Of a stretch of 64,000 nt of DNA, positions 14,311 through 58,191 are shown piece after piece (the stretch's first letter is position 1; each line of letters starts with the position of its first letter). The notes below the pieces were generated by a model that was given only the letters and a program-made list of their open reading frames with translations, made no database searches and was not told the origin of the DNA. Both the position numbers and the translations under genes were made by a program. Location: positions 310,001 to 374,000 of IMG/VR virus record IMGVR_UViG_3300017971_000185; one strand, written 5' to 3'.

Positions 14311-14653
14311 TCGGTCGAGAGGATGAGGAGATCGCAGCCGCAAGGCTGAGGAAAGTCCGGGCTCCGTAGAGCAGCGTGCTTGGGAAATCCAAGTCGGGGC
14401 GACCCGCAGGAAAGTGCCGCAGAAAGCAAACCGCCGATGGCCTTCGGGCACAGGCAAGGGTGAAAGGGTGGGGTAAGAGCCCACCGGGTTCCTGGCGACA
14501 GGGATCGCATGGTAAACCCCACGCGGAGCAAGACAAACAGAGAGCGCTGAAGTTGCTCGCCTAGCTCTCGGGTTGTCGCAAAGATGAATGATCGCCACCT
14601 GGCAAGGGCAACCGACCCAGGGACAGAACCCGGCTTACGACCCTCTCGGCCGA
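14311..14653 (+). ncRNA. rnpB: RNase P RNA (bacterial type A)
   Basis: GAGGAAAGTCCGGGCTCC, GGAAAGTGCCGCAGAAA, GGTAAACCCCAC..GGAGCAAG and ACAGAACCCGGCTTA; P1 TCGGTCGAGAGG/CCTCTCGGCCGA. Confidence 0.95.
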
Positions 14654-32901: not shown

Positions 32902-33049
32902 GGGAGACACAGGATCTCGTTTCGAGGTCACAAGCACGGTAAGACGCAGCATTCATAACGCTGAGACTGTGGGTTCAATCCCCACCCCCGCTTTCATGGC
33001 GGGGTAGTCAAATCGCAAGAACACCTGACACACTCTCCTGTGTCCTCCC
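32902..33049 (+). ncRNA. Y-like RNA: tRNA mimic opened in the D loop, acceptor stem closed, CACAAGC/CACTC module
   Basis: Outer stem GGGAGACACAGGA/TCCTGTGTCCTCCC; order 3' D strand, anticodon arm (CAT), T arm, CCCCGC-loop-GCGGGG, 5' D strand. Confidence 0.75.
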
Positions 33050-33094
33050 GACCCTTCCAGACTTCAACCCGCAACCCGAAAGGAGGACAATCTG

Positions 33095-33325: not shown

Positions 33326-33865
33326 ATGAACGGAGAAGCATTTGCATTTTCCGACGAATCGCGCAAAGCTCAGTTTGGCGCGACTAAAGTCTGTTCTAGG
33401 TGTCGTAGGGAGCTTCCTGTTGCCGACTTTTCGTATGCGAGCCGTGTAAAGCTCTATGCCTGGTGTCGCGACTGCGCACGGACTTATCAGCGGGAAGTCT
33501 ATCGGACGTTTGAGGGGCAGATGAAGCATCGGGTTCGTGCGGCGCGAGGAAGGGCTCAGCGATTTGGTTTAGATTTCGATCTTGCCGTTCAGGATCTTCT
33601 TGAGTTGTGGGACGAACAGGACGGGAAGTGTGCAATTTCAGGATTGCCCATGGTCATCGATAGCGAAGAGGAGAAAGGGAAGCAAGCGTTTCGTCCGTCC
33701 GTTGACCGCATCGTTCCGAAACGCGGATACGTTCGGGGGAACATTCGGCTGGTGACGACTATCGTAAACTTCGGGATCAACAAGTGGGGTCTCGATCCGT
33801 TTCTTGCCATGTGCGAAGGTGTTGTTCAAACCATAGGCGAAAGGAAGGCATACCATGACTGTTGA
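33326..33865 (+). CDS. HNH-like endonuclease
   Basis: CSRC..CRDC; GKCAISG..PSVDRI....GY..GNIRLV..VN. Confidence 0.75.
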   Translation: MNGEAFAFSDESRKAQFGATKVCSRCRRELPVADFSYASRVKLYAWCRDCARTYQREVYRTFEGQMKHRVRAARGRAQRFGLDFDLAVQDLLELWDEQDGKCAISGLPMVIDSEEEKGKQAFRPSVDRIVPKRGYVRGNIRLVTTIVNFGINKWGLDPFLAMCEGVVQTIGERKAYHDC

Positions 33866-35747
33866 AAACCTGGGGCCTGCTGAAAAGATCATCCAAGCTC
33901 TTTTGACGCACACGGACCATCTCTACCACAACCGACCGGGAATCGTGGTTGCCGACCGGCGTACCACGACTGGCGTGCGGTGGGATCCTGTCACGTGGAA
34001 GGCAGGCGAGAACGGTGAGCGTACCGTCTACCGTTTGGTGAAGGCGGGACGTAAGCAGCGTCGTGTCGAGATCGGCACGATGAACGGCGAGAACCGCAAG
34101 ATCATGAAGGACGGAGCCGAGGTAGGCGAGTACCGTCCGAGCGGCTTGTACCCCGAAGTCGCCATTTGGTTCTACAAGCAAGTTGCCGAAGTGTGGAAGC
34201 TGGACAACGAGTTTGCCGCACGTTGGGCATCGTTCGCGTTCCGTCAGGACCACCGCGATCTCAAGGTCGTTCTGGCCGCCTTCCTCTTGGTCCAGTCGCG
34301 TAAGGGCGATCCCGTCATGGACGGCATGGTCCGTCTGTTCGCGGATGAGGACTACAGGGACGTGGGCGAGGCGATGATCTTGCTCCAAGAGAAGGGCAAG
34401 GATCTCAACCCGAAGCTGTTGCTCCGCATCTGGGAGGTTCTCTCGTTGCCGGAGATCGCGGCTGTCAACCGCGAGCTTGGTTTCGGCAAGTCGGCAAAGC
34501 GTCCATTCCTGGGTCGTTGGAGCAGGGCGGTCGAGAAGTGGCTCCGCTACCGTGAAGAGAACCCGAAGATGCTGGAGGGTCTCGTCAAGGCCGGATTCAG
34601 AACCACGGTGATGACGCTTGCCCGGAAGATCGGCTACAAGCCCACGACTGATCGGTTCTTCGAAGTCCTGCGCTGGAAGCAGAAGCAGGCCGAAGATGGC
34701 CGTCGTGAGATGGCGATTGGCAAGGAAGTCAAGGCGGCCGAGTCTTGGGCGGATCTCGATGAAATGTCGATCTGCGAGATCATCGAGAAGACCAAGCCGA
34801 ATTGGAAGCGGATCGTTGGTTTGCTTCCTTCCGAGGTTGGCGTGACCCGTGCAATCATGGCTGCGGCCATCGAGGCAGGCTCTCTGTCGGACAAGGACAT
34901 CATCATCCTGACGCCGACGTTGGAGGAGCTTGGGCTGCTCAAGGTCCAAGAGATCAAGGAACGTCTCGACTCGGCCCTGGCTCGGGCGAACGACATGCGT
35001 GCGGCCAACATCGCTCGCAACGTCCGTGACAAGGAGACCAAGGAGACGCTGGAGGCGGGTGCCGACAAGGCCGCTCAGAAGGTGGTCGAGGAAGTCGCAC
35101 GCGACATCACCATCGACTTCATCGTTGACATTTCGGCTTCGATGGAAGGCGCCCTGGATGCGGCCAAGCCGCTCATCGCCAAGTTTCTCCAGGCCCTTCC
35201 GGCTGATTACGTCAATGTTGCCGTGTTCAACACGGCAGGCCGTGAGGTCAAGGTCAAGCACAACTCGACCAAGGGCGTCGAGGCCGCTTTCCGCGGCATC
35301 AAGGCCGGAGGAGGCACTGACTACGGTGCGGGTGTGCGGGCAGTCCAGAAGCACGCGACCCCGGAAGGCCACGATCGCATCATGGTCTTCATTGGGGATG
35401 AGGAAGCACGGCCGTTCGATGAGGCTGTGAGGGTGTCGGGTCTCAACCCGGTTGCCTTCGGATTCCTCAAGACGGTTCCCTTCGGAGGAGCCGCAGCGTG
35501 GCGTTATCGGCACTACGGGCCGGACGGCAACATCGCAGTGCGGGAGACGGCTGCTCGTCTCAACATCCCATGCTTCATGATCGATGACCGCACTTTCGAG
35601 GACCCCTACGCAATCACTCGCACTCTCCAGGCTTTGATTGCGGCGACTCCGGTTGGGGAAGTGACTCAGGCTCGTCCGCGTCCGCGCGTGACGCTCGTTG
35701 ATCAGATTCTCAACACTGAGTTGCTTGCTAAGCCCGCATGGGCATGA
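33855..35747 (+). CDS. Ro60/TROVE-like protein with a C-terminal vWA domain
   Basis: Long helical N-terminal region, then MIDAS motifs VDISASM, GGTD and IGDE; TROVE assignment inferred from architecture and context. Confidence 0.65.
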   Translation: MTVENLGPAEKIIQALLTHTDHLYHNRPGIVVADRRTTTGVRWDPVTWKAGENGERTVYRLVKAGRKQRRVEIGTMNGENRKIMKDGAEVGEYRPSGLYPEVAIWFYKQVAEVWKLDNEFAARWASFAFRQDHRDLKVVLAAFLLVQSRKGDPVMDGMVRLFADEDYRDVGEAMILLQEKGKDLNPKLLLRIWEVLSLPEIAAVNRELGFGKSAKRPFLGRWSRAVEKWLRYREENPKMLEGLVKAGFRTTVMTLARKIGYKPTTDRFFEVLRWKQKQAEDGRREMAIGKEVKAAESWADLDEMSICEIIEKTKPNWKRIVGLLPSEVGVTRAIMAAAIEAGSLSDKDIIILTPTLEELGLLKVQEIKERLDSALARANDMRAANIARNVRDKETKETLEAGADKAAQKVVEEVARDITIDFIVDISASMEGALDAAKPLIAKFLQALPADYVNVAVFNTAGREVKVKHNSTKGVEAAFRGIKAGGGTDYGAGVRAVQKHATPEGHDRIMVFIGDEEARPFDEAVRVSGLNPVAFGFLKTVPFGGAAAWRYRHYGPDGNIAVRETAARLNIPCFMIDDRTFEDPYAITRTLQALIAATPVGEVTQARPRPRVTLVDQILNTELLAKPAWA

Positions 35748-35754
35748 GGTCGTC

Positions 35755-36684
35755 ATGGGTTGGAGGGATCTACTTTCGACAGGGGAAGAGAATGTAACTC
35801 TTCCCTGGACCGGTGGTGGGTCCCTCCACTCGGCCTCGCGGGTATTCAAGCTGGACAAGCGACCCCGTGAGTTTGGCTGGTACACCTTCCAGATCAACGG
35901 GACCAAGGCCAACGAGCCCAAGCCAGCAGAAGCCGATCCCGATTTGCTCAAGCACACGGTCGTCGGTTACCTCGTTGGAGATCGTCTAGTACCCGACGAT
36001 ACCCGGATCGATCCCGACCCTGGGAAAATCGTCAACTATTCCGAGAAAGTGTACATTCTTTCCGAGGAATTGGAACGTTTCTCTCGCATTCGTGCGGGAA
36101 GGGTGTATCCTGAGGGTCCGCTCATTTTCCGAGAGCAGGTTTTTCCTCTCGGACCGGAAGATGAAGTAATGGACGCTTTCCTCGACAACCGAAGCGAAGT
36201 ACACAGCATCCCCGGAGTCGTTCCGGCTCTCGATGCTGCCTTTCGAATGGAGGTTTACCAACGCGATCAAGCTGAGAAACGACGCCAGGAAATCGCTCGC
36301 AAACGAGCCGAGGAAGAGGCCCGCAGGCTACAGGAGCAGCGTCGCAAGGAGCTACGCGAAAAGCTCGGAGATGGCCAAGGGCGTCGGGCCATGGCTCATC
36401 AGGGAGACTTCAAGGAAGCGGCTCAGGCAGCGCTCCAAGTGGGCGGTGCCGTGTATCTCGACCACCGCTGCATCCGCGGAGGCGAGTGGGCCGTGAAGTA
36501 TCGTGTCGATGGACACCGACTGGAGTGCGTTTGCACAACGCACATGCAGATCATCGACGCGGGCATTTGCCTGGAGGATCACCACACGGGCGAGAGAGGC
36601 GACACTTACTTCACCCTGGAGAGTTTGCCTGCGGTCATTCGACAAGCCCTCCGCGAAGACAGACTCGTGTATAGGCACGTATGA
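35755..36684 (+). CDS. putative E2-like conjugating protein
   Basis: In an operon with JAB, Ubl and E1; C-terminal IIDAGICL resembles the UBC G.ICL active-site Cys. Confidence 0.5.
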   Translation: MGWRDLLSTGEENVTLPWTGGGSLHSASRVFKLDKRPREFGWYTFQINGTKANEPKPAEADPDLLKHTVVGYLVGDRLVPDDTRIDPDPGKIVNYSEKVYILSEELERFSRIRAGRVYPEGPLIFREQVFPLGPEDEVMDAFLDNRSEVHSIPGVVPALDAAFRMEVYQRDQAEKRRQEIARKRAEEEARRLQEQRRKELREKLGDGQGRRAMAHQGDFKEAAQAALQVGGAVYLDHRCIRGGEWAVKYRVDGHRLECVCTTHMQIIDAGICLEDHHTGERGDTYFTLESLPAVIRQALREDRLVYRHV

Positions 36685-37253
36685 TGGACTTCGACATCAA
36701 AGCTGTTGGTACTGATCTTCTTCTCGTTGGGGGCGTCTGGGCAGGCGACCACAGCACGTACATCTGTGTGTTTCCCGAATTCCACGGGATTCCCGAGGAC
36801 ATCCACGTGCTCAGCATGTCCGGCGATGAGTGGAAGAAGTTGATCAGGCAGTCCGATCTCGTAGAGAAGGAAGTGCTGGAAAAGGCCGAGGACGGGAAAC
36901 TGATCAAGGCCGTTGCGAGGAAGTGTCAGCGCAGCATCGATCAGAACGTCTCCTGGGCGGTCTACAGGCGAGACGAGTTTCGTTGTCGGTACTGCGGCAA
37001 CGACAAGGTTCCGCTCACCGTCGATCATCTCGTTTTGTGGGAGGAGTGCGGCCCATCAATTGAGGACAACTTGGTTGCTTGCTGCCGTCGTTGCAATAAG
37101 ACGCGCGGCAACATGCAGTACGCGGATTGGCTCAAGCATCCGTACTACCGGAAGGTGTCCCAAAACCTGACTGCGCTGACCAGGACCGACAACGAAGAGC
37201 TAGTCGAAACCCTCGATGCGATTCCACGCGTGATTAAGAAGAGGAAGCGATGA
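36681..37253 (+). CDS. HNH endonuclease
   Basis: RDEFRCRYCG..LTVDHL..NLVACCRRCN. Confidence 0.85.
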   Translation: MMDFDIKAVGTDLLLVGGVWAGDHSTYICVFPEFHGIPEDIHVLSMSGDEWKKLIRQSDLVEKEVLEKAEDGKLIKAVARKCQRSIDQNVSWAVYRRDEFRCRYCGNDKVPLTVDHLVLWEECGPSIEDNLVACCRRCNKTRGNMQYADWLKHPYYRKVSQNLTALTRTDNEELVETLDAIPRVIKKRKR

Positions 37254-37636
37254 TCGAAGCAGGCGTAGTCGTGACCGGATGGGGTCCAATGTACTGGCAT
37301 CTGCCGAAGGGAAGGTCCGGCGGCAGCATTCCAGACAGCAGGAAACTGTGGGATGTGTTGTGGGATCTGCGGCAGGAAGCGTTCCTGGGATTCGCCCACA
37401 GCCATCCTGGGTCTGGTAAGCCAGGTCCGTCCATGACCGATCTGACCACGTTTGCTGCCGTGGAGCTTGGGTTGGGACGAAGGCTGACGTGGTGGATCGT
37501 GAATTCTGATTCGATGATCGGTCTGCAATGGGAGGGACCGGAGAAGTACGACTACAACGAGTTTTCTGTGAACACGCCACCATGGGCTCGAAAGCTGATG
37601 GTGCTTTCAGAGAGAGAGGAAGAAAATGGAAGCTAA
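37250..37636 (+). CDS. JAB/MPN+ metalloprotease (deubiquitinase-like)
   Basis: N-terminal E, HSHP......PS.TD JAMM motif. Confidence 0.85.
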   Translation: MIEAGVVVTGWGPMYWHLPKGRSGGSIPDSRKLWDVLWDLRQEAFLGFAHSHPGSGKPGPSMTDLTTFAAVELGLGRRLTWWIVNSDSMIGLQWEGPEKYDYNEFSVNTPPWARKLMVLSEREEENGS

Positions 37637-37883
37637 CGAAGCACGAGTGAACATCACTTACCGCGGCCAAAACGGCGACCTGCCTGACCCGGTGAATAAG
37701 GACGCCACCGAAGCCGACATCAAGTCGTGGGTTACGGAAGCCGTAGCCAATGGGTCGGTTCCGGGCATCCCGGCGGATGCCACCGCGGATTTCACCGACT
37801 TCGTGGTGGACCGTTTTGAGGCCAACCAGGAGCGCGAGTGGTGTTTAATCCAGGTCCGCCCCAAAACCCCATTTGGGTCGTGA
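37626..37883 (+). CDS. ubiquitin-like (beta-grasp) protein
   Basis: 85 aa between JAB and E1; C-terminus RPKTPFG-S. Confidence 0.65.
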   Translation: MEANEARVNITYRGQNGDLPDPVNKDATEADIKSWVTEAVANGSVPGIPADATADFTDFVVDRFEANQEREWCLIQVRPKTPFGS

Positions 37884-38156
37884 TGCTGGGAATCCTTTAT
37901 TGGTTGTTCGGCTTCGCCACAGCTTGTGTGATTCTATGGCCGTTGCGTCGCAAGAGGACGTGGAACGAGAAGGATGGCTGGTGTGGCGACCCGGCTTGTC
38001 AGGTATGCGTGCGTCCGTCAGGGGCGCGGTGGGGGTCCGAGTGACGATTGAGGGAATCGCAGAATGGGCGCATGAGTGGCGCGCATGGCTAGCTCTTGCG
38101 TTCCTGGCAACGGTTCTCTTCCTCTGGGACCGAAGGATCCACAAGTGGAGGAAGCG

Positions 38157-38729
38157 ATGAAGATCACGATCATCGGAGCGGGAGCACTCGGGTCGCACTT
38201 GGTGCAGGCTCTACGGAACGAGGACGTGACCCTCAAGGTCGTGGATCACGACAGGGTCGAGATGCGCAACGTTGCGTCTCAGTTTCACTTCAAGCAGAGC
38301 GTGAGCAAGAAGAAGACCGACTCGCTCAAGCAGGCCATGCAATTCTGCTACGGCCGCAAGATTGAGGTTGTGGGGAACAAACTCACATCCAACAACTGCG
38401 AGCAACTCCTGAGCGGGGCAGATCTCTTGGTGGACTGTCTGGACAACGGAGAGGCTCGTAGGCTCGTCCAGGGCTTTGCCCGGTCCAAGAACGTCCCCTG
38501 TCTCCACGGGGCTCTGGCGGCCGATGGGGGCTTTGGGCGGGTCATCTGGAGCGCCGATTTCGTGATCGATGAGGAGGATGTCGCGGGAGCCGCTACCTGC
38601 GAGGGCGGCGAATTCCTGCCATTCATCGGAATCGTCGCGTTCTACATGGCTTACGCCGTCCAGCGGTTCGTCAAGGACAGCCGGATGACGGGCTACTCCA
38701 TCTCTCCAGCGGGGGTCGAAAAAATCTGA
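38157..38729 (+). CDS. ThiF/E1-like adenylyltransferase
   Basis: IIGAGALGS, DHDRVE.RN..SQ, DCLDN..AR; candidate catalytic Cys in ATCE. Confidence 0.9.
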   Translation: MKITIIGAGALGSHLVQALRNEDVTLKVVDHDRVEMRNVASQFHFKQSVSKKKTDSLKQAMQFCYGRKIEVVGNKLTSNNCEQLLSGADLLVDCLDNGEARRLVQGFARSKNVPCLHGALAADGGFGRVIWSADFVIDEEDVAGAATCEGGEFLPFIGIVAFYMAYAVQRFVKDSRMTGYSISPAGVEKI

Positions 38730-38738
38730 CAGACCCCC

Positions 38739-38767
38739 TTGACAGGCGGCCTTTCTTCCTTCAGACT
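38739..38767 (+). promoter_or_regulatory. sigma70-like promoter of the ncRNA array
   Basis: TTGACA-N17-CAGACT. Confidence 0.55.
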
Positions 38768-38774
38768 GCCGCCC

Positions 38775-38838
38775 TGGCTCGTTCCAAACGCGTAGATCTC
38801 ACAAGCTCGTGACCCAGATCCCGCTCTCGGAAGGACCA
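38775..38838 (+). ncRNA. minimal CACAAGC module without a tRNA domain
   Basis: TTCC..GATCT-CACAAGC-..-AGATC..CTCTC-GGAA. Confidence 0.55.
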
Positions 38839-38845
38839 AAACCAA

Positions 38846-38973
38846 GCCGGACATGACCCGTGGGGGTCACCCGATTTTCCATCGGTAACGATCCGACAGC
38901 ACCACTCGCCCCTCAAGAGGGGCTCACGGATGATGTCCACAAGCACTGCCAGGTTCGACTCCTGGGTCCGGCG
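38846..38973 (+). ncRNA. tRNA mimic type A1 (open acceptor, module inserted in the variable loop)
   Basis: GCCGGAC/GTCCGGC; D, anticodon and T arms; GACA..CACTC-hairpin-..TGTC-CACAAGC insert. Confidence 0.75.
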
Positions 38974-38974
38974 C

Positions 38975-39104
38975 TGAAGCAACCAACCAGACAGGGCTCA
39001 CACGCAAAGTAGCTCATTGGGTAGAGCATCGGTATCGCAAACCGAGGGTAGCTGGTTCAAGTCCAGTCCTTGCAACAAACAAGCTCTTCAACTCGGTTGC
39101 TTCA
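38975..39104 (+). ncRNA. Y-like RNA type B1 (whole tRNA mimic nested inside the module)
   Basis: Outer stem TGAAGCAACC/GGTTGCTTCA; loop ATCGCAA. Confidence 0.75.
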
Positions 39105-39144
39105 CCCATTTTCTGACAATCTTTCTGGCGATCATGCGCAACAC

Positions 39145-39272
39145 GGCGGACCAGGCCCGGTGGGGGCCAACCGACTTACACTCGGCAACGATCCGACACC
39201 AACACTCGCCTCTTTCGAGGCTCCTCGGTTGAATGTCCACAAGCTAGCCTGGTTCGATTCCAGGGTCCGCCT
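39145..39272 (+). ncRNA. tRNA mimic type A2
   Basis: Paralog of A1 with compensatory changes (GGCGGAC/GTCCGCC; CCTGG/CCAGG). Confidence 0.75.
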
Positions 39273-39274
39273 CT

Positions 39275-39404
39275 GAAGCGACCAAACCCGAAAGGGCTCA
39301 CAAGCAAAGAAGCTCATTTGGCTGAGCGTCTCGATCATAACGAGAAGGTAGCTGGTTCAACTCCAGTCCTTGCACTCTGTTCAGCCCCTCAACTCGGTCG
39401 CTTC
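39275..39404 (+). ncRNA. Y-like RNA type B2
   Basis: Paralog of B1; GAAGCGACC/GGTCGCTTC; loop ATCATAA. Confidence 0.75.
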
Positions 39405-39412
39405 CACTATTC

Positions 39413-39556
39413 GATCAACGCCAACAGATCAATCTCACAAGCATTGTTGGTTCGATTCCAACCCCCGCCACTCATGGCGGGGTAGCCAAATGGTAAAGGC
39501 ACCGGTACAAGGAACCGGCGTGAAAACGCAATCAGGTTTTTCACTCGGCGTTGATC
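39413..39556 (+). ncRNA. Y-like RNA type C1 (permuted: T arm, closed acceptor, D arm, anticodon arm)
   Basis: GATCAACGCC/GGCGTTGATC; CCCCGCCA-CTCA-TGGCGGGG. Confidence 0.8.
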
Positions 39557-39612
39557 AACTTTCCCTTCTCGGGTGCGGCTCTCGCGAGCCCCCGATTTTC
39601 ACCCCAACAGTA

Positions 39613-39765
39613 TTGGTCAATGCCAACAGATCAACCTCACAAGCATCATGTTGGTTCGAGTCCAACCTCCCCCACCCATGGGGGAGTAGCCTAACTGGAA
39701 AAGGCACCAGACGTGTAAATCTGGCGTGTAAACGCAATCAAGGTTTCTCACTCGGCGTTGACCAA
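39613..39765 (+). ncRNA. Y-like RNA type C2
   Basis: TTGGTCAATGCC/GGCGTTGACCAA; CTCCCCCA-CCCA-TGGGGGAG. Confidence 0.8.
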
Positions 39766-39769
39766 GTTT

Positions 39770-39853
39770 TTCTCCCCGAGCGACGGCGCTTTCGCCAACT
39801 CCGTCAGGACCGGAAGGTAGCAGCGGTAACGGAGGACCGGGTGCTCGGGGGAA
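39770..39853 (+). ncRNA. ffs: small SRP RNA (4.5S-like)
   Basis: Helix-8 motif GTCAGGACCGGAAGGTAGCAGC inside a hairpin closed by CCCCGAGC/GCTCGGGG. Confidence 0.85.
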
Positions 39854-39905
39854 CGTTTCACCGAGCCGGGGTCGTCGGTGGGCGCTTATCGCCGCGGAGA
39901 GGCGT

Positions 39906-57402: not shown

Positions 57403-57641
<239 letters not shown>

Positions 57642-57673
57642 ACATTTTCACAACAACCCAAACCAAGAACCAA

Positions 57674-58100: not shown

Positions 58101-58172
58101 GCGTGTGTAGCTCAGTTGGCAGAGCATCAGCTTCCATGCTGAGGGTCGCGGGTTCGATCCCCGCCACATGCT
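58101..58172 (+). tRNA. tRNA-Gly-type body with a 6-nt anticodon loop (probably a defective Gly(CCC))
   Basis: TCAGC-TTCCAT-GCTGA. Confidence 0.65.
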
Positions 58173-58191
58173 CGAAAGGAAGAACATGAAC

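What the first reader, a model, noticed from the sequence alone, without database searches (positions are those of the whole stretch)
33855..39765. Ro60/TROVE-like vWA protein plus ubiquitin-like conjugation operon coupled to an array of tRNA-mimic RNAs
Seen: a translationally coupled run of a 630-aa helical+vWA protein, an E2-like protein (DAGICL), HNH, JAB peptidase, an 85-aa Ubl ending FG-S and a ThiF/E1. It is followed immediately by a promoter and seven related structured RNAs. Established: Ro60/Rsr binds Y RNAs, bacterial YrlA RNAs carry a tRNA-like domain with a closed acceptor stem, and bacterial E1/E2/JAB/Ubl systems conjugate proteins in phage conflicts (CBASS Cap2/Cap3, Bil). Inference: a phage ribonucleoprotein in which the Ro-like protein holds tRNA-shaped baits and acts as an RNA-guided E3-like adaptor, so that proteins binding the bait (for example anticodon nucleases) are Ubl-tagged or sequestered. 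JAB would trim the terminal Ser to expose Gly.
Basis: partly seen in the sequence, partly recalled or inferred. Interest (0 to 1): 0.9.

Follow-up and report, generated by a model that had tools for sequence, protein, structure and literature searches.

The report
Ro60-like, ubiquitin-like and tRNA-shaped RNA module
A huge phage carries a conserved gene set (a Ro60-like ring/vWA protein, a small ubiquitin-like protein with its activating, candidate conjugating and trimming enzymes) flanked by tRNA-shaped non-coding RNAs. The same proteins and RNAs recur together in hundreds of cyanobacterial genomes, so this looks like an undescribed RNA-linked protein-tagging system.

Summary
Window 33855-38729 encodes a 630-aa helical+vWA protein, a 309-aa Cys protein, an HNH, a JAB peptidase, an 85-aa protein ending FG-S and a short ThiF E1. 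They are followed at 38790-39766 by six structured tRNA-like RNAs plus one fragment.

- **vWA protein:** its AlphaFold model matches phage and Xenopus Ro60 best, but no sequence method reaches TROVE.
- **Ubl:** 51 homologues share RPKTPFG followed by 0-60 variable residues. JAB and E1 motifs are invariant.
- **E2:** this assignment rests only on topology and an invariant Cys.
- **RNAs:** there are two classes, permuted (YrlA-like T arm, closed acceptor, D arm) and non-permuted. Both sit in a conserved "clamp" and show strong covariation (94-96% paired; 39/40 and 35/36 pairs compensatory).
- **Phage synteny:** the order vWA, E2-like, JAB, Ubl, E1 holds in about 55 of 64 huge-phage loci, and clamp RNAs flank the operon in about 38 of 44.
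- **Cyanobacteria:** the decisive result is that cyanobacteria carry clamp RNA, Ubl (ending YG, no JAB found in the two loci profiled), vWA homologue, E2-like and E1 in the same order, with or without tRNA arrays (432 loci).

So the RNA-protein linkage is real. The "RNA-guided E3 that tags anticodon nucleases" mechanism remains untested. I found no description of this system in the searched literature.

The parts
32905..33045 (+). Clamp-type tRNA-like RNA just upstream of the operon. It has a P1 stem, CACAAGC, an anticodon-like arm (CAU), a T arm, a closed acceptor hairpin and a D-like arm.
   Evidence: Fold z = -3.4, 0/200 shuffles. Sequence read. Only a partial R1 match at 32968-33093, 23 bits. 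The weakest of the RNA parts.
33326..33865 (+). Endonuclease VII/HNH-like homing endonuclease, overlapping the vWA start. A variable passenger.
   Evidence: PHROG endonuclease VII, E 7e-22. Found in only 3-4 of 64 related loci.
33855..35747 (+). Ro60-like protein: N-terminal beta domain (~26-95), alpha-solenoid (~100-415) and a C-terminal vWA domain with an intact MIDAS (D425, S427, S429, T488, D515).
   Evidence: Pfam VWA_2. AF2 pLDDT 81. Foldseek top hits are Ro60/TROVE. MIDAS residues invariant. More than 1800 homologues.
35755..36684 (+). E2-like candidate: beta-rich N-domain (1-145), long helix (157-229), and a C-terminal helix + 4 strands + Cys loop (DAGIC272L) + helix.
   Evidence: AF2 pLDDT 88. 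C258 and C272 invariant in 53 homologues. No significant fold or family match. Cyanobacterial homologue sits next to E1 (hhalign 78%, E 1.7e-5).
36681..37253 (+). HNH homing endonuclease inserted in the operon. A variable passenger.
   Evidence: Pfam HNH, E 1.4e-8. Present at this position in only a few loci.
37250..37636 (+). JAB/JAMM metallopeptidase, predicted to trim the Ubl precursor and perhaps to deconjugate.
   Evidence: Prok-JAB E 1.9e-4, PADLOC JAB. E...HxH...S..D motif conserved in 52 homologues.
37626..37883 (+). Ubiquitin-like protein precursor ending RPKTPFG-S.
   Evidence: 51 homologues share RPKTPFG, then 0-60 variable residues. No profile hit. Beta-grasp fold not tested.
38157..38729 (+). 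Minimal E1 (ThiF adenylation domain, 190 aa) with an invariant Cys148.
   Evidence: Pfam ThiF E 3e-25. PADLOC E1-E2 E 4e-13. NCBIfam ThiF/MoeB/UbaA. GxGxxG, DxxDN and TC motifs invariant in 44 homologues.
38846..38975 (+). tRNA-like RNA with a 7-bp acceptor stem, D- and anticodon-like hairpins, a ~60-nt variable-arm insert (GAUCCGA, CACUCG, CACAAGC) and a T arm. First copy.
   Evidence: Fold z = -3.1. Repeat with 39146-39275, with a compensatory acceptor change.
38974..39106 (+). Clamp RNA with a non-permuted tRNA-like core (ARAGORN tRNA-Ala cgc, 39003-39076).
   Evidence: Seed of model R2, 153.7 bits. Family covariation 95.9% paired.
39146..39275 (+). Second copy of the long-variable-arm tRNA-like RNA.
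39273..39407 (+). Second clamp RNA with a non-permuted core (ARAGORN tRNA-Met cat, 39303-39375). The anticodon stem is fully compensated relative to the first copy.
   Evidence: Seed of model R2, 163.8 bits.
39411..39559 (+). Clamp RNA with a circularly permuted tRNA-like core: T arm, closed acceptor, D arm, anticodon-like arm, GNRA hairpin.
   Evidence: Fold z = -5.7. Rfam YrlA partial hit, E 0.013. Seed of model R1. Family covariation 93.8% paired.
39613..39766 (+). Second permuted clamp RNA.
   Evidence: Fold z = -4.0. Rfam YrlA partial hit, 28 bits, E 3.9e-4. Seed of model R1.
57491..57645 (+). A further permuted clamp RNA, 18 kb away in another tRNA cluster.
   Evidence: R1 54.9 bits. Fold z = -5.1.

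Best explanation
This is one conserved system, not a chance neighbourhood. It combines a Ro60-like alpha-solenoid+vWA protein, a dedicated ubiquitin-like conjugation cascade, and Y-RNA-like non-coding RNAs.

The cascade has four parts:
- a Ubl ending in Gly;
- a minimal ThiF-type E1 with an invariant Cys;
- a Cys-bearing E2-like protein with a beta-rich N-domain;
- in phages, a JAB peptidase that removes residues after the Gly.

In the RNAs, a conserved two-helix "clamp" (P1/P2 plus the strands yACAAGCA and CA(A)CUCGG) presents a tRNA-shaped module, either normal or circularly permuted.

Proposed working (inferred):
1. By analogy with Ro60-Y RNA particles, the Ro-like protein, probably with the tightly coupled E2-like protein, binds the clamp.
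2. The tRNA-shaped module engages tRNA-recognising factors.
3. JAB matures the Ubl, E1 adenylates it and forms a thioester, and it passes to the E2-like Cys.
4. The Ubl is conjugated to a protein held on or near the RNP.

The biological role is tied to tRNA supply, surveillance or repair, under translational stress or phage-host conflict.

Shown here: the parts, their conservation, the catalytic motifs, the RNA structures and the co-occurrence across phages and cyanobacteria.

Inferred: RNA binding, Ubl transfer, and the identity of the targets.
For: Conserved gene order:
- vWA, E2-like, JAB, Ubl, E1 in about 55 of 64 huge-phage loci at 40-78% identity, with only the HNH genes varying.
- vWA and E2-like are separated by 7-40 nt in about half of the loci.

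RNA linkage in phages:
- Clamp RNAs lie within 2.5 kb downstream of E1 in about 30 of 42 loci, and just upstream of vWA in about 8 more.
- 7 of the 8 clamp-bearing RNAs in the 64-kb window flank the operon (two further tRNA-like RNAs in the array were not modelled), while 44 tRNAs are spread over many clusters.
- An RNA-first scan of viral contigs recovered 17 of 22 contigs already known to carry the vWA gene.

Independent lineage (cyanobacteria):
- Order there is clamp RNA, 66-aa Ubl ending YG, clamp RNA, vWA homologue (hhalign 97.9% and 98.6%), E2-like homologue (78%, E 1.7e-5), short E1 (37% identity).
- In 80 loci, Ubl is present in 74, E2-like in 66 and E1 in 62. Clamp RNAs were found in at least 26 of 36 loci scanned.
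- In Nostoc and Calothrix there is no tRNA array, only the clamp RNAs.

RNA structure:
- 93.8% and 95.9% of cells are paired, against 34-50% for slid controls.
- 39/40 and 35/36 pairs show compensatory changes.

Ro60 likeness.

Enzyme motifs invariant.

Ubl processing signature: in phages a variable tail follows the Gly and a JAB is present. In cyanobacteria there is no tail, and no JAB was found in the two loci searched with the JAB profile.

Context: Tpt1, Thg1, RNase T, a ligase, EF-Tu and RNase P RNA are in the window.
Against: - No sequence method places the helical domain in TROVE: no Pfam hit, hhalign 13-18%, and hmmsearch against 9kop gives only E 0.1. Foldseek TM-scores are low (0.22-0.33) and the model pTM is 0.49, so a closed ring is not shown.
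- The E2 fold is unproven: the best UBC hit has E about 1, probability 0.2, and there are no Prok-E2 Pfam hits in 53 members.
- The Ubl beta-grasp fold was not modelled. Homology between the cyanobacterial and phage Ubl is not significant (hhalign 6%).
- The RNAs lack the published GNCGAA Ro-binding motif and score far below the YrlA gathering threshold (28 vs 69 bits).
- Some clamp RNAs lie far from the operon (window 57491; L135).
- Within the phage clade, co-occurrence could partly reflect inherited synteny.
- There is no experimental evidence of any kind.
Confidence: 0.55

Rival explanations
1. Sulfur-relay reading. The Ubl and E1 form a ThiS/MoaD/TtuB/Urm1-type sulfur carrier pair. The Ubl C-terminal Gly is thiocarboxylated and donates sulfur for thiolation of the neighbouring tRNAs or tRNA-like RNAs. 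JAB only matures the carrier. The Cys protein and the vWA protein are RNA-binding accessory factors.
For: - The best named matches of E1 are ThiF/MoeB/UbaA adenylyltransferases.
- The module sits in or beside tRNA arrays.
- The 66-85-aa Ubl with a C-terminal Gly resembles the small Ubl sulfur carriers with C-terminal Gly. Dual-use Ubl/E1/JAMM systems are known in Thermus and archaea (own knowledge; PMC2948915, PMC3980101 listed).
Against: - No rhodanese domain on E1.
- No TtuA/Ncs6-type PP-loop family appeared in the operon proteins or among the 25 families listed (of 38 matched) for the window's larger ORFs.
- The Ubl ends in a single Gly after Phe/Tyr, not GG.
- The PADLOC matches of E1 are to conjugating Cap2-type E1-E2 proteins.
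- An invariant Cys protein is tightly coupled to E1 (overlapping genes in cyanobacteria), as an E2 would be.
Confidence: 0.12
2. Neighbours-only reading. The clamp RNAs are unusual tRNAs or pre-tRNAs of the mobile tRNA arrays, with leader-trailer pairing and motifs serving as processing signals. The protein module is a separate cargo of the same mobile region, for example a defence or anti-defence Ubl system with a vWA sensor. It does not bind the RNAs.
For: - Two cores are called tRNAs by ARAGORN and Rfam.
- Clamp RNAs also occur away from the operon (window 57491; L135).
- Long tRNA arrays are known mobile units accompanied by homing endonucleases (PMC8421152).
- Known bacterial Ubl pathways act in phage defence (PMC11601596).
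Against: - In Nostoc and Calothrix the clamp RNAs flank the Ubl gene with no tRNA array present.
- The order RNA, Ubl, RNA, vWA is kept between lineages whose proteins are only 24-37% identical.
- The permuted cores with closed acceptor stems cannot be aminoacylated as transcribed.
- The acceptor mismatches are conserved.
- Among real tRNAs in the window none carries the CACAAGC motif.
Confidence: 0.15
3. RNA-as-substrate or RNA-as-switch reading. The tRNA-shaped RNAs are not baits for other proteins. They are either the regulated object or the trigger. Either their cleavage or modification state gates the Ro-like protein and switches Ubl conjugation on, as damaged tRNA switches on the Rsr-YrlA-RtcB operon. 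Or the Ubl is transferred onto the RNP's own proteins to control their stability.
For: - Ro60-Y RNA logic, in which Y RNA gates access to the Ro cavity (PMC4201824).
- RNA-repair genes (Tpt1, Thg1, ligase, RNase T) in the window.
- Long tRNA arrays are induced under translational stress (PMC8421152).
- Anticodon-like loops vary widely between copies, as expected for sensors of diverse tRNA-directed attacks.
Against: Nothing in the sequence distinguishes this from the bait/adaptor version. No regulator or CARF-like sensor was identified next to the module.
Confidence: 0.15

Closest known systems
Ro60 (Rsr)-Y RNA ribonucleoproteins, including YrlA and phage Ro60 (Thermus phage phiLo 9KOP/9L5Y; mycobacteriophage Bxz1 gp220)
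   Same: - Alpha-helical solenoid followed by a vWA domain with a MIDAS.
- Best structural matches of the model.
- Non-coding RNAs encoded beside the gene.
- An RNA with a T arm, closed acceptor stem and D arm in the YrlA order.
- Setting among RNA-repair genes (PMC7824862).
   Different: - No TROVE signature by Pfam or HH-suite.
- An extra N-terminal beta domain in the phage form.
- The RNAs have a different conserved stem and motifs, with no GNCGAA.
- The RNAs carry complete cloverleaf-like cores, some not permuted, and come in arrays.
- No Ro60 system in the papers searched is linked to a Ubl cascade.
Bacterial ubiquitin-like conjugation pathways: Bil (Ubl, E2, JAB, E1), type II CBASS Cap2/Cap3, 6A-MBL, Bub/6E
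   Same: - Separate Ubl, E1 and JAB genes plus a Cys protein in the E2 position.
- E1 matches Cap2-type E1-E2 profiles (E 4e-13) and the 6A-MBL cap2_3 model.
- The Ubl precursor is trimmed to a C-terminal Gly.
   Different: - The E2-like and Ubl proteins match no known family profile.
- E1 is a bare 190-aa adenylation domain.
- A Ro60-like vWA protein and structured RNAs are constant partners.
- Found in phage genomes as well as bacteria.
- None of the described families includes vWA or RNA components (PMC11601596).
vWA-MoxR FtsH ternary conflict systems with a Ubl-conjugation set (Kaur et al. 2020, PMC7159879)
   Same: A vWA protein genomically coupled to E1, E2, JAB and Ubl.
   Different: Those systems have MoxR and FtsH ATPases, a RING E3, a Ubl-E2 fusion and caspase-like effectors, and no RNAs. 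None of these is present here.
[quoted passage not shown]
   Same: In Leptolyngbyales plasmids and in the huge phages the module abuts arrays of 26-44 tRNA genes with HNH homing endonucleases.
   Different: - The papers read do not mention the protein module or the clamp RNAs.
- In Nostocales the module occurs without an array.

Membership tests
Ro60/TROVE (Pfam PF05731) | Sequence match to the TROVE profile or to bona fide Ro60 orthologues | tested here: not met
   - No Pfam TROVE hit at E<=1, and none in the precomputed domains of 120 homologues.
- hhalign against 30 Ro60 orthologues: 13-18% probability, E 1-2e-3, although collinear over 298 columns.
- hmmsearch against 9kop: E 0.11 in the helical region.
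Ro60/TROVE (Pfam PF05731) | HEAT-like alpha-solenoid ring closed by a C-terminal vWA domain | tested here: inconclusive
   - Foldseek top PDB hits are Ro60 (E 5e-8, 2.7e-6, 1.3e-4) over 440-567 columns, ahead of vWA-only hits.
- TM is only 0.22-0.33 and pTM 0.49, so ring closure is not shown.
Ro60/TROVE (Pfam PF05731) | Intact MIDAS in the vWA domain | tested here: met
   D425-x-S427-x-S429, T488 and D515 are invariant or nearly so across phage and distant homologues.
Ro60/TROVE (Pfam PF05731) | Binds Y RNA / misfolded RNA | not testable with these tools
   Only adjacency of structured RNAs is shown.
YrlA / bacterial Y RNA (Rfam RF02553) | Reaches the family's gathering score | tested here: not met
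   28.1 and 22.8 bits against a threshold of 69. Only model positions 29-81 match.
YrlA / bacterial Y RNA (Rfam RF02553) | tRNA-like module in the order T arm, closed acceptor stem, D arm, enclosed by a stem formed by the 5' and 3' ends | tested here: met
   - Alignment to the YrlA consensus and MFE folds.
- Covariation in 38 sequences.
- Holds for the permuted class only.
YrlA / bacterial Y RNA (Rfam RF02553) | GNCGAA(N)G Ro-binding motif near the 5' end (PMC4201824) | tested here: not met
   - The consensus of 38 RNAs has CCA...yACAAGCA at the 5' side and CACUCGG at the 3' side, with no CGAA.
- A GAUCCGA resembling the vertebrate GGUCCGA occurs only in the two long-variable-arm RNAs.
Bil-like bacterial Ubl conjugation | E1: ThiF adenylation domain with a conserved catalytic Cys | tested here: met
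   ThiF E 3e-25. GxGxxG, DxxDN and T147-C148 are invariant in 44 homologues.
Bil-like bacterial Ubl conjugation | E2: UBC fold with a catalytic Cys | tested here: inconclusive
   - Invariant C272 lies in a loop after a helix + four strands and before a helix.
- The best UBC structure hit has E about 1.
- No Prok-E2/UQ_con hit in 53 members.
Bil-like bacterial Ubl conjugation | Ubl: beta-grasp protein with an exposed or exposable C-terminal Gly | tested here: inconclusive
   - The C-terminal Gly signature is very clear.
- No profile match.
Bil-like bacterial Ubl conjugation | JAB/JAMM peptidase with an intact metal site | tested here: met
   - The motif is conserved in 52 phage homologues, with weak profile hits.
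- No JAB was found with the JAB profile in the two cyanobacterial loci searched. The Ubl needs no trimming there.
Bil-like bacterial Ubl conjugation | Thioester intermediates and Ubl-target conjugates | not testable with these tools
   Needs biochemistry.
Functional tRNA | Cloverleaf with a paired 7-bp acceptor stem with free ends, and a canonical anticodon loop | tested here: inconclusive
   - 39003-39076 and 39303-39375 score 54 and 40 bits as tRNA but share mismatches at 1:72 and 6:67. They are buried in a 9-bp outer stem.
- The permuted RNAs have closed acceptor stems and lack U33.
TtuB/TtuC- or Urm1/Uba4-type sulfur relay | Partner PP-loop thiouridine synthetase and/or a rhodanese domain | tested here: not met
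   - None found in the operon proteins.
- None in the 25 families listed out of 38 for 40 window ORFs.
- Not an exhaustive search of the 497-kb genome.

The most novel reading that the evidence does not exclude
An RNA-scaffolded ubiquitin-like ligase. The Ro60-like ring and the E2-like protein assemble on the clamp of tRNA-shaped RNAs. The interchangeable tRNA-like cores have varied anticodon loops, permuted or not. They act as specificity modules that recruit tRNA-directed proteins (anticodon nucleases, modification or charging enzymes, translation factors) for Ubl tagging or sequestration. This would be a programmable, RNA-guided protein-tagging system shared by huge phages and cyanobacterial mobile elements.
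Probability: 0.15. Interest if true: 0.92.

Novelty: new variant of a known kind. Interest (0 to 1): 0.85.

Why it matters
- It would be the first link between the two ancient systems, Ro60-Y RNA particles and ubiquitin-like conjugation. Their bacterial roles are only now being worked out.
- It offers a tractable bacterial setting (Nostoc, Anabaena and relatives) to ask what tRNA-like Y RNAs are for.
- The module is abundant: more than 1800 protein clusters in huge phages and 432 cyanobacterial loci among species-representative genomes. Yet its Ubl and E2-like proteins and the helical domain of its vWA protein escape all profile libraries tested, so it is currently annotated as hypothetical.
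- Its attachment to mobile tRNA arrays suggests a role in keeping translation running under attack or stress. That bears on phage-host conflict and on how huge phages take over translation.

Tried and rejected
- **DNA search:** megablast of the operon against GenBank phages found no match. tblastn found only Virus Rctr197k, where the gene is an unannotated misc_feature.
- **Sequence route to TROVE:** all of the following failed or were marginal.
  - phmmer/hmmsearch against the PDB.
  - hhalign against Bxz1 gp220 alone (4%) and against 30 Ro60 orthologues (13-18%).
  - Pfam scan of nine distant 520-610-aa relatives plus one other hit from the 1.84-billion-protein search gave no bridging TROVE or DUF2828 hit.
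- **E2-like protein:** Pfam, PADLOC, NCBIfam and PHROGs gave nothing. Foldseek on the full-length model gave nothing significant.
- **Ubl:** a PDB profile search and a Pfam scan of 51 members gave nothing. hhalign of phage against cyanobacterial Ubl was not significant.
- **Small ORF 37873-38160:** not conserved, so rejected as a gene.
- **Other Dolichospermum ORFs:** the 76-aa ORF and the 332-aa ORF are unrelated to the Ubl and vWA families.
- **Phage tail-assembly reading (lambda K/I-like JAB+Ubl):** considered because of weak PHROG and Pfam hits. Rejected because of E1, the Cys protein, the genomic setting and the cyanobacterial plasmid or chromosomal copies.
- **Genome-contig scan:** A single cyanobacterial protein was used instead, so only close cyanobacterial relatives were sampled.

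Full report
**Setting.** The window is part of a huge phage genome. It is identical over the operon to IMG/VR UViG 3300017971_000185 (497 kb) and 3300018065_000011 (372 kb). It holds 44 tRNA genes, a class A RNase P RNA (14315-14653) and a small SRP RNA (39767-39859). Its larger ORFs include EF-Tu, Tpt1/KptA, Thg1, RNase T, an ATP-dependent ligase and a TnpB-like protein. GC content is about 58% with positive GC skew, and almost all genes are on the + strand.

**The proteins.**
- Pfam recognises only the vWA domain of the 630-aa protein, the HNH, weakly the JAB, and the ThiF domain. PADLOC places the ThiF protein next to Cap2-type E1-E2 proteins. NCBIfam places it next to ThiF/MoeB/UbaA.
- The 309-aa and 85-aa proteins match nothing in Pfam, PADLOC, PHROGs or NCBIfam.
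- Gene junctions are ATGA overlaps, 11-nt overlaps or a 7-nt spacer, except for 273 nt before E1.

**Is the 630-aa protein Ro60-like?**
- The family is large: more than 1800 clusters, all metagenomic, on contigs up to 618 kb.
- An AlphaFold2 model (pLDDT 81, pTM 0.49) shows a beta domain (~26-95), about 20 helices (100-415) and a vWA domain.
- Foldseek against the PDB ranks first the Thermus phage phiLo Ro60 (9kop, E 5e-8; 9l5y, E 2.7e-6), with Xenopus Ro60 (2i91) at 1.3e-4. These align 440-567 columns, whereas vWA-only hits align about 200.
- BFVD gives helical+vWA proteins of giant viruses, including DUF2828 proteins.
- TM-scores are low (0.22-0.33).
- Sequence methods do not confirm TROVE:
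  - no Pfam hit;
  - hhalign against 30 true Ro60 orthologues (seeded with mycobacteriophage Bxz1 gp220) reaches only 13-18% probability, although the alignment is collinear over 298 columns;
  - a broadened profile touches 9kop at E 0.11 in the helical part.
- The MIDAS residues are invariant.
- Verdict: Ro60-like architecture, not a demonstrable TROVE member.

**The Ubl cascade.**
- Fifty-one homologues of the 85-aa protein all carry RPKTPFG, followed by nothing, one residue, or up to about 60 unrelated residues. This is the signature of a Ubl precursor trimmed to a C-terminal Gly.
- JAB keeps E...HxH...S..D in 52 homologues.
- E1 keeps GxGxxG, DxxDN and a Thr-Cys pair in 44 homologues.
- The 309-aa protein (pLDDT 88) has a beta-rich N-domain, with weak OB-fold-like hits to S17, eIF1A and the LysRS N-domain. 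It then has a 70-residue helix and a C-terminal helix, four strands, loop with invariant C272, and helix. That is the order of secondary-structure elements of a UBC core.
- However, Foldseek gives no significant match, and the best UBC hit has E about 1. I treat "E2" as plausible, not shown.

**The RNAs.**
- 38790-39766 contains two ~300-nt repeats and two ~150-nt RNAs about 200 nt apart.
- Each 300-nt repeat holds two RNAs:
  - a tRNA-like RNA with a 7-bp acceptor stem and a ~60-nt variable-arm insert;
  - a "clamp" RNA, in which a 9-bp outer stem P1 and a 5-bp P2 enclose CUCACA(A/C)GC, a complete cloverleaf and CAACUCGG.
- ARAGORN and Rfam call these two cores tRNA-Ala and tRNA-Met, with the same two acceptor mismatches.
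- The 150-nt RNAs have the same clamp, but the core is circularly permuted: T arm, acceptor stem closed by a loop, UA, D arm, anticodon-like arm, GNRA hairpin. Rfam's YrlA model aligns exactly this T, closed acceptor, D segment (28 and 23 bits, E 4e-4 and 0.013 on the short region; gathering score 69).
- Covariance models built from the window copies find 38 permuted and more than 45 non-permuted full-length relatives in related loci.
  - 93.8% and 95.9% of cells are paired, against 34-50% for slid controls.
  - 39/40 and 35/36 pairs show compensatory changes, including P1 and P2.
  - These alignments are fitted to the models, which favours pairing, but the margin is large.
- Conserved unpaired strands are yACAAGCA and CACUCGG. 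The published Y RNA motif GNCGAA is absent.
- Further copies lie at 32905-33045, just upstream of the operon with a third permutation, and at 57491-57645.

**Linkage in phages.**
- In 64 loci from huge-phage contigs, the order vWA, E2-like, JAB, Ubl, E1 is kept wherever the contig allows. Identities are 40-78%. HNH genes and other inserts come and go.
- By my tally:
  - about 30 of 42 loci with room have a clamp RNA within 2.5 kb after E1;
  - about 8 more have one just before the vWA gene;
  - 5 have none at the thresholds used.
- A pattern scan of all viral contigs for the RNA, filtered with the model, gave 22 contigs, of which 17 were already in the vWA list. The ~40-kb prophage hits were ordinary tRNAs.
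- Five RNA-bearing stretches had no operon genes within the few kb fetched.

**Linkage outside phages: the key result.**
- tblastn of E1 against plasmids found short ThiF genes in Dolichospermum flos-aquae pAfl69 and Kovacikia minuta pA (37-38% identity).
- In Dolichospermum:
  - the gene before E1 is a homologue of the E2-like protein (hhalign 78%, E 1.7e-5, including the GICL...F.L.SL motif);
  - across the record origin lies a 479-aa protein homologous to both the helical part (97.9%, E 3.5e-13) and the vWA part (98.6%, E 6e-16) of the phage protein;
  - upstream on the same strand are two full-length clamp RNAs (44 and 42 bits) flanking a 66-aa ORF ending RPEAVYG-stop.
- Kovacikia has a tRNA array (about 31 genes), Ubl, clamp RNA, vWA homologue, two extra ORFs, E2-like and E1.
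- A scan of species-representative genomes found 432 cyanobacterial loci. In the best 80 (Leptolyngbya, Nostoc, Calothrix, Scytonema, Chroococcidiopsis and others):
  - Ubl is present in 74, E2-like in 66 and E1 in 62, in the same order;
  - clamp RNAs are present in at least 26 of 36 loci scanned.
- In Nostoc linckia and Calothrix there is no tRNA array, only the two clamp RNAs around the Ubl gene.
- No JAB was found in the two loci searched with the JAB profile, and the cyanobacterial Ubl ends exactly at Gly. This complements the phage pattern of tail plus JAB.
- Homology of the two Ubl families is suggested only by position, size and the [FY]V[VI]DR...RP...[FY]G motif. hhalign is not significant.

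**Interpretation.**
- The constant set is clamp RNA + Ubl + Ro60-like vWA protein + Cys protein + E1. It is kept across lineages whose proteins are about 24-37% identical, and it is independent of tRNA arrays. It is therefore very probably one functional system.
- The most economical mechanism combines what is established for its two relatives:
  - Ro60 binds the stem of Y RNAs, whose other module recruits partners (PMC4201824, PMC12135203).
  - Bil/CBASS-type E1/E2/JAB sets conjugate a Gly-terminated protein to targets (PMC11601596).
- I therefore propose an RNP on which Ubl conjugation takes place, linked to tRNA surveillance or defence of translation. Binding, transfer and targets are inferred.
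- Rivals are a sulfur-carrier role in tRNA thiolation, mere co-transfer of unrelated cargo, and RNAs acting as sensors or switches.

**Known or new?** Jumbo-phage TROVE proteins, phage Ro60 and bacterial Ubl pathways are known (PMC7824862, PMC12135203, PMC11601596), and vWA proteins occur with Ubl sets in FtsH-ternary systems (PMC7159879). I found nothing describing this combination, these RNAs or these protein families, including in the two papers on cyanobacterial tRNA arrays. One key review (Burroughs and Aravind 2016) was not available. I rate it a new variant built from known kinds, with high interest.

**Limits.**
- Nothing here is experimental.
- The tally of RNA positions was made by hand from the result tables.
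- The cyanobacterial sample is restricted to close relatives of one query.
- The Ubl fold and the E2 fold remain unverified because structure and fold-search quotas were exhausted.

Noticed in passing
window 14315-14653 and 39767-39859: The phage encodes a class A RNase P RNA (247 bits) and a small SRP RNA (57.7 bits). The SRP RNA starts one base after the last tRNA-like RNA.
   Followed up: no
window, larger ORFs (not mapped individually): Pfam families present include EF-Tu (E 4e-60), Tpt1/KptA, Thg1, RNase T, ATP-dependent ligase, cpYpsA SLOG, spermidine synthase, pyruvoyl arginine decarboxylase, a TnpB-like protein and a resolvase. This is a translation and RNA-repair gene set.
   Followed up: partly
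window 58101-58173 and 706-781: ARAGORN reports a tRNA with a two-base anticodon (cc) and a minus-strand tRNA-Asn with anticodon ATT. Both are unusual.
   Followed up: no
window 37873-38160: An ORF of 95 codons with a hydrophobic stretch fills the Ubl-E1 gap and ends in an ATGA overlap with E1. It has no counterpart in any other locus.
   Followed up: yes
L149-L228 (cyanobacterial genomes): The vWA homologue is 85-97% identical across distant cyanobacterial genera (Leptolyngbya, Nostoc, Calothrix, Scytonema, Chroococcidiopsis). This suggests recent horizontal spread of the module.
   Followed up: no
L225 4400-4475; L217 4396-4470 and 6124-6198; L148 5051-5123: The cores of cyanobacterial clamp RNAs carry different anticodon triplets (CUA, read by ARAGORN as tRNA-Pyl; CUU; UGG; UGA; CAU). 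The tRNA-like part is variable while the clamp is constant.
   Followed up: partly
L148 7168-7893 and 7973-8833: Two extra ORFs lie between the vWA homologue and the E2-like gene in Kovacikia. They are found in only 4-5 of 80 cyanobacterial loci. Their function was not examined.
   Followed up: no
L146 820-2314 (Dolichospermum pAfl69): A HEPN-domain gene and a 332-aa gene lie on the opposite strand between the vWA homologue and the E2-like gene. An IS1634 transposase follows E1.
   Followed up: no
L135 3259-3412 (contig 3300037470_001039): A permuted clamp RNA very close to the window's (128.6 bits) has no operon gene within the 5 kb upstream of it.
   Followed up: partly
L065 (Virus Rctr197k, KX853510): This is the only GenBank phage with the vWA gene. 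There it directly follows a 36-gene tRNA array, and a ThiF-like gene lies about 7 kb downstream. The vWA gene is annotated only as a misc_feature.
   Followed up: partly
window 33855-35747, residues ~26-95: The phage vWA protein has an N-terminal beta-rich domain. It is missing from the cyanobacterial homologues and from about nine distant 520-610-aa relatives.
   Followed up: partly
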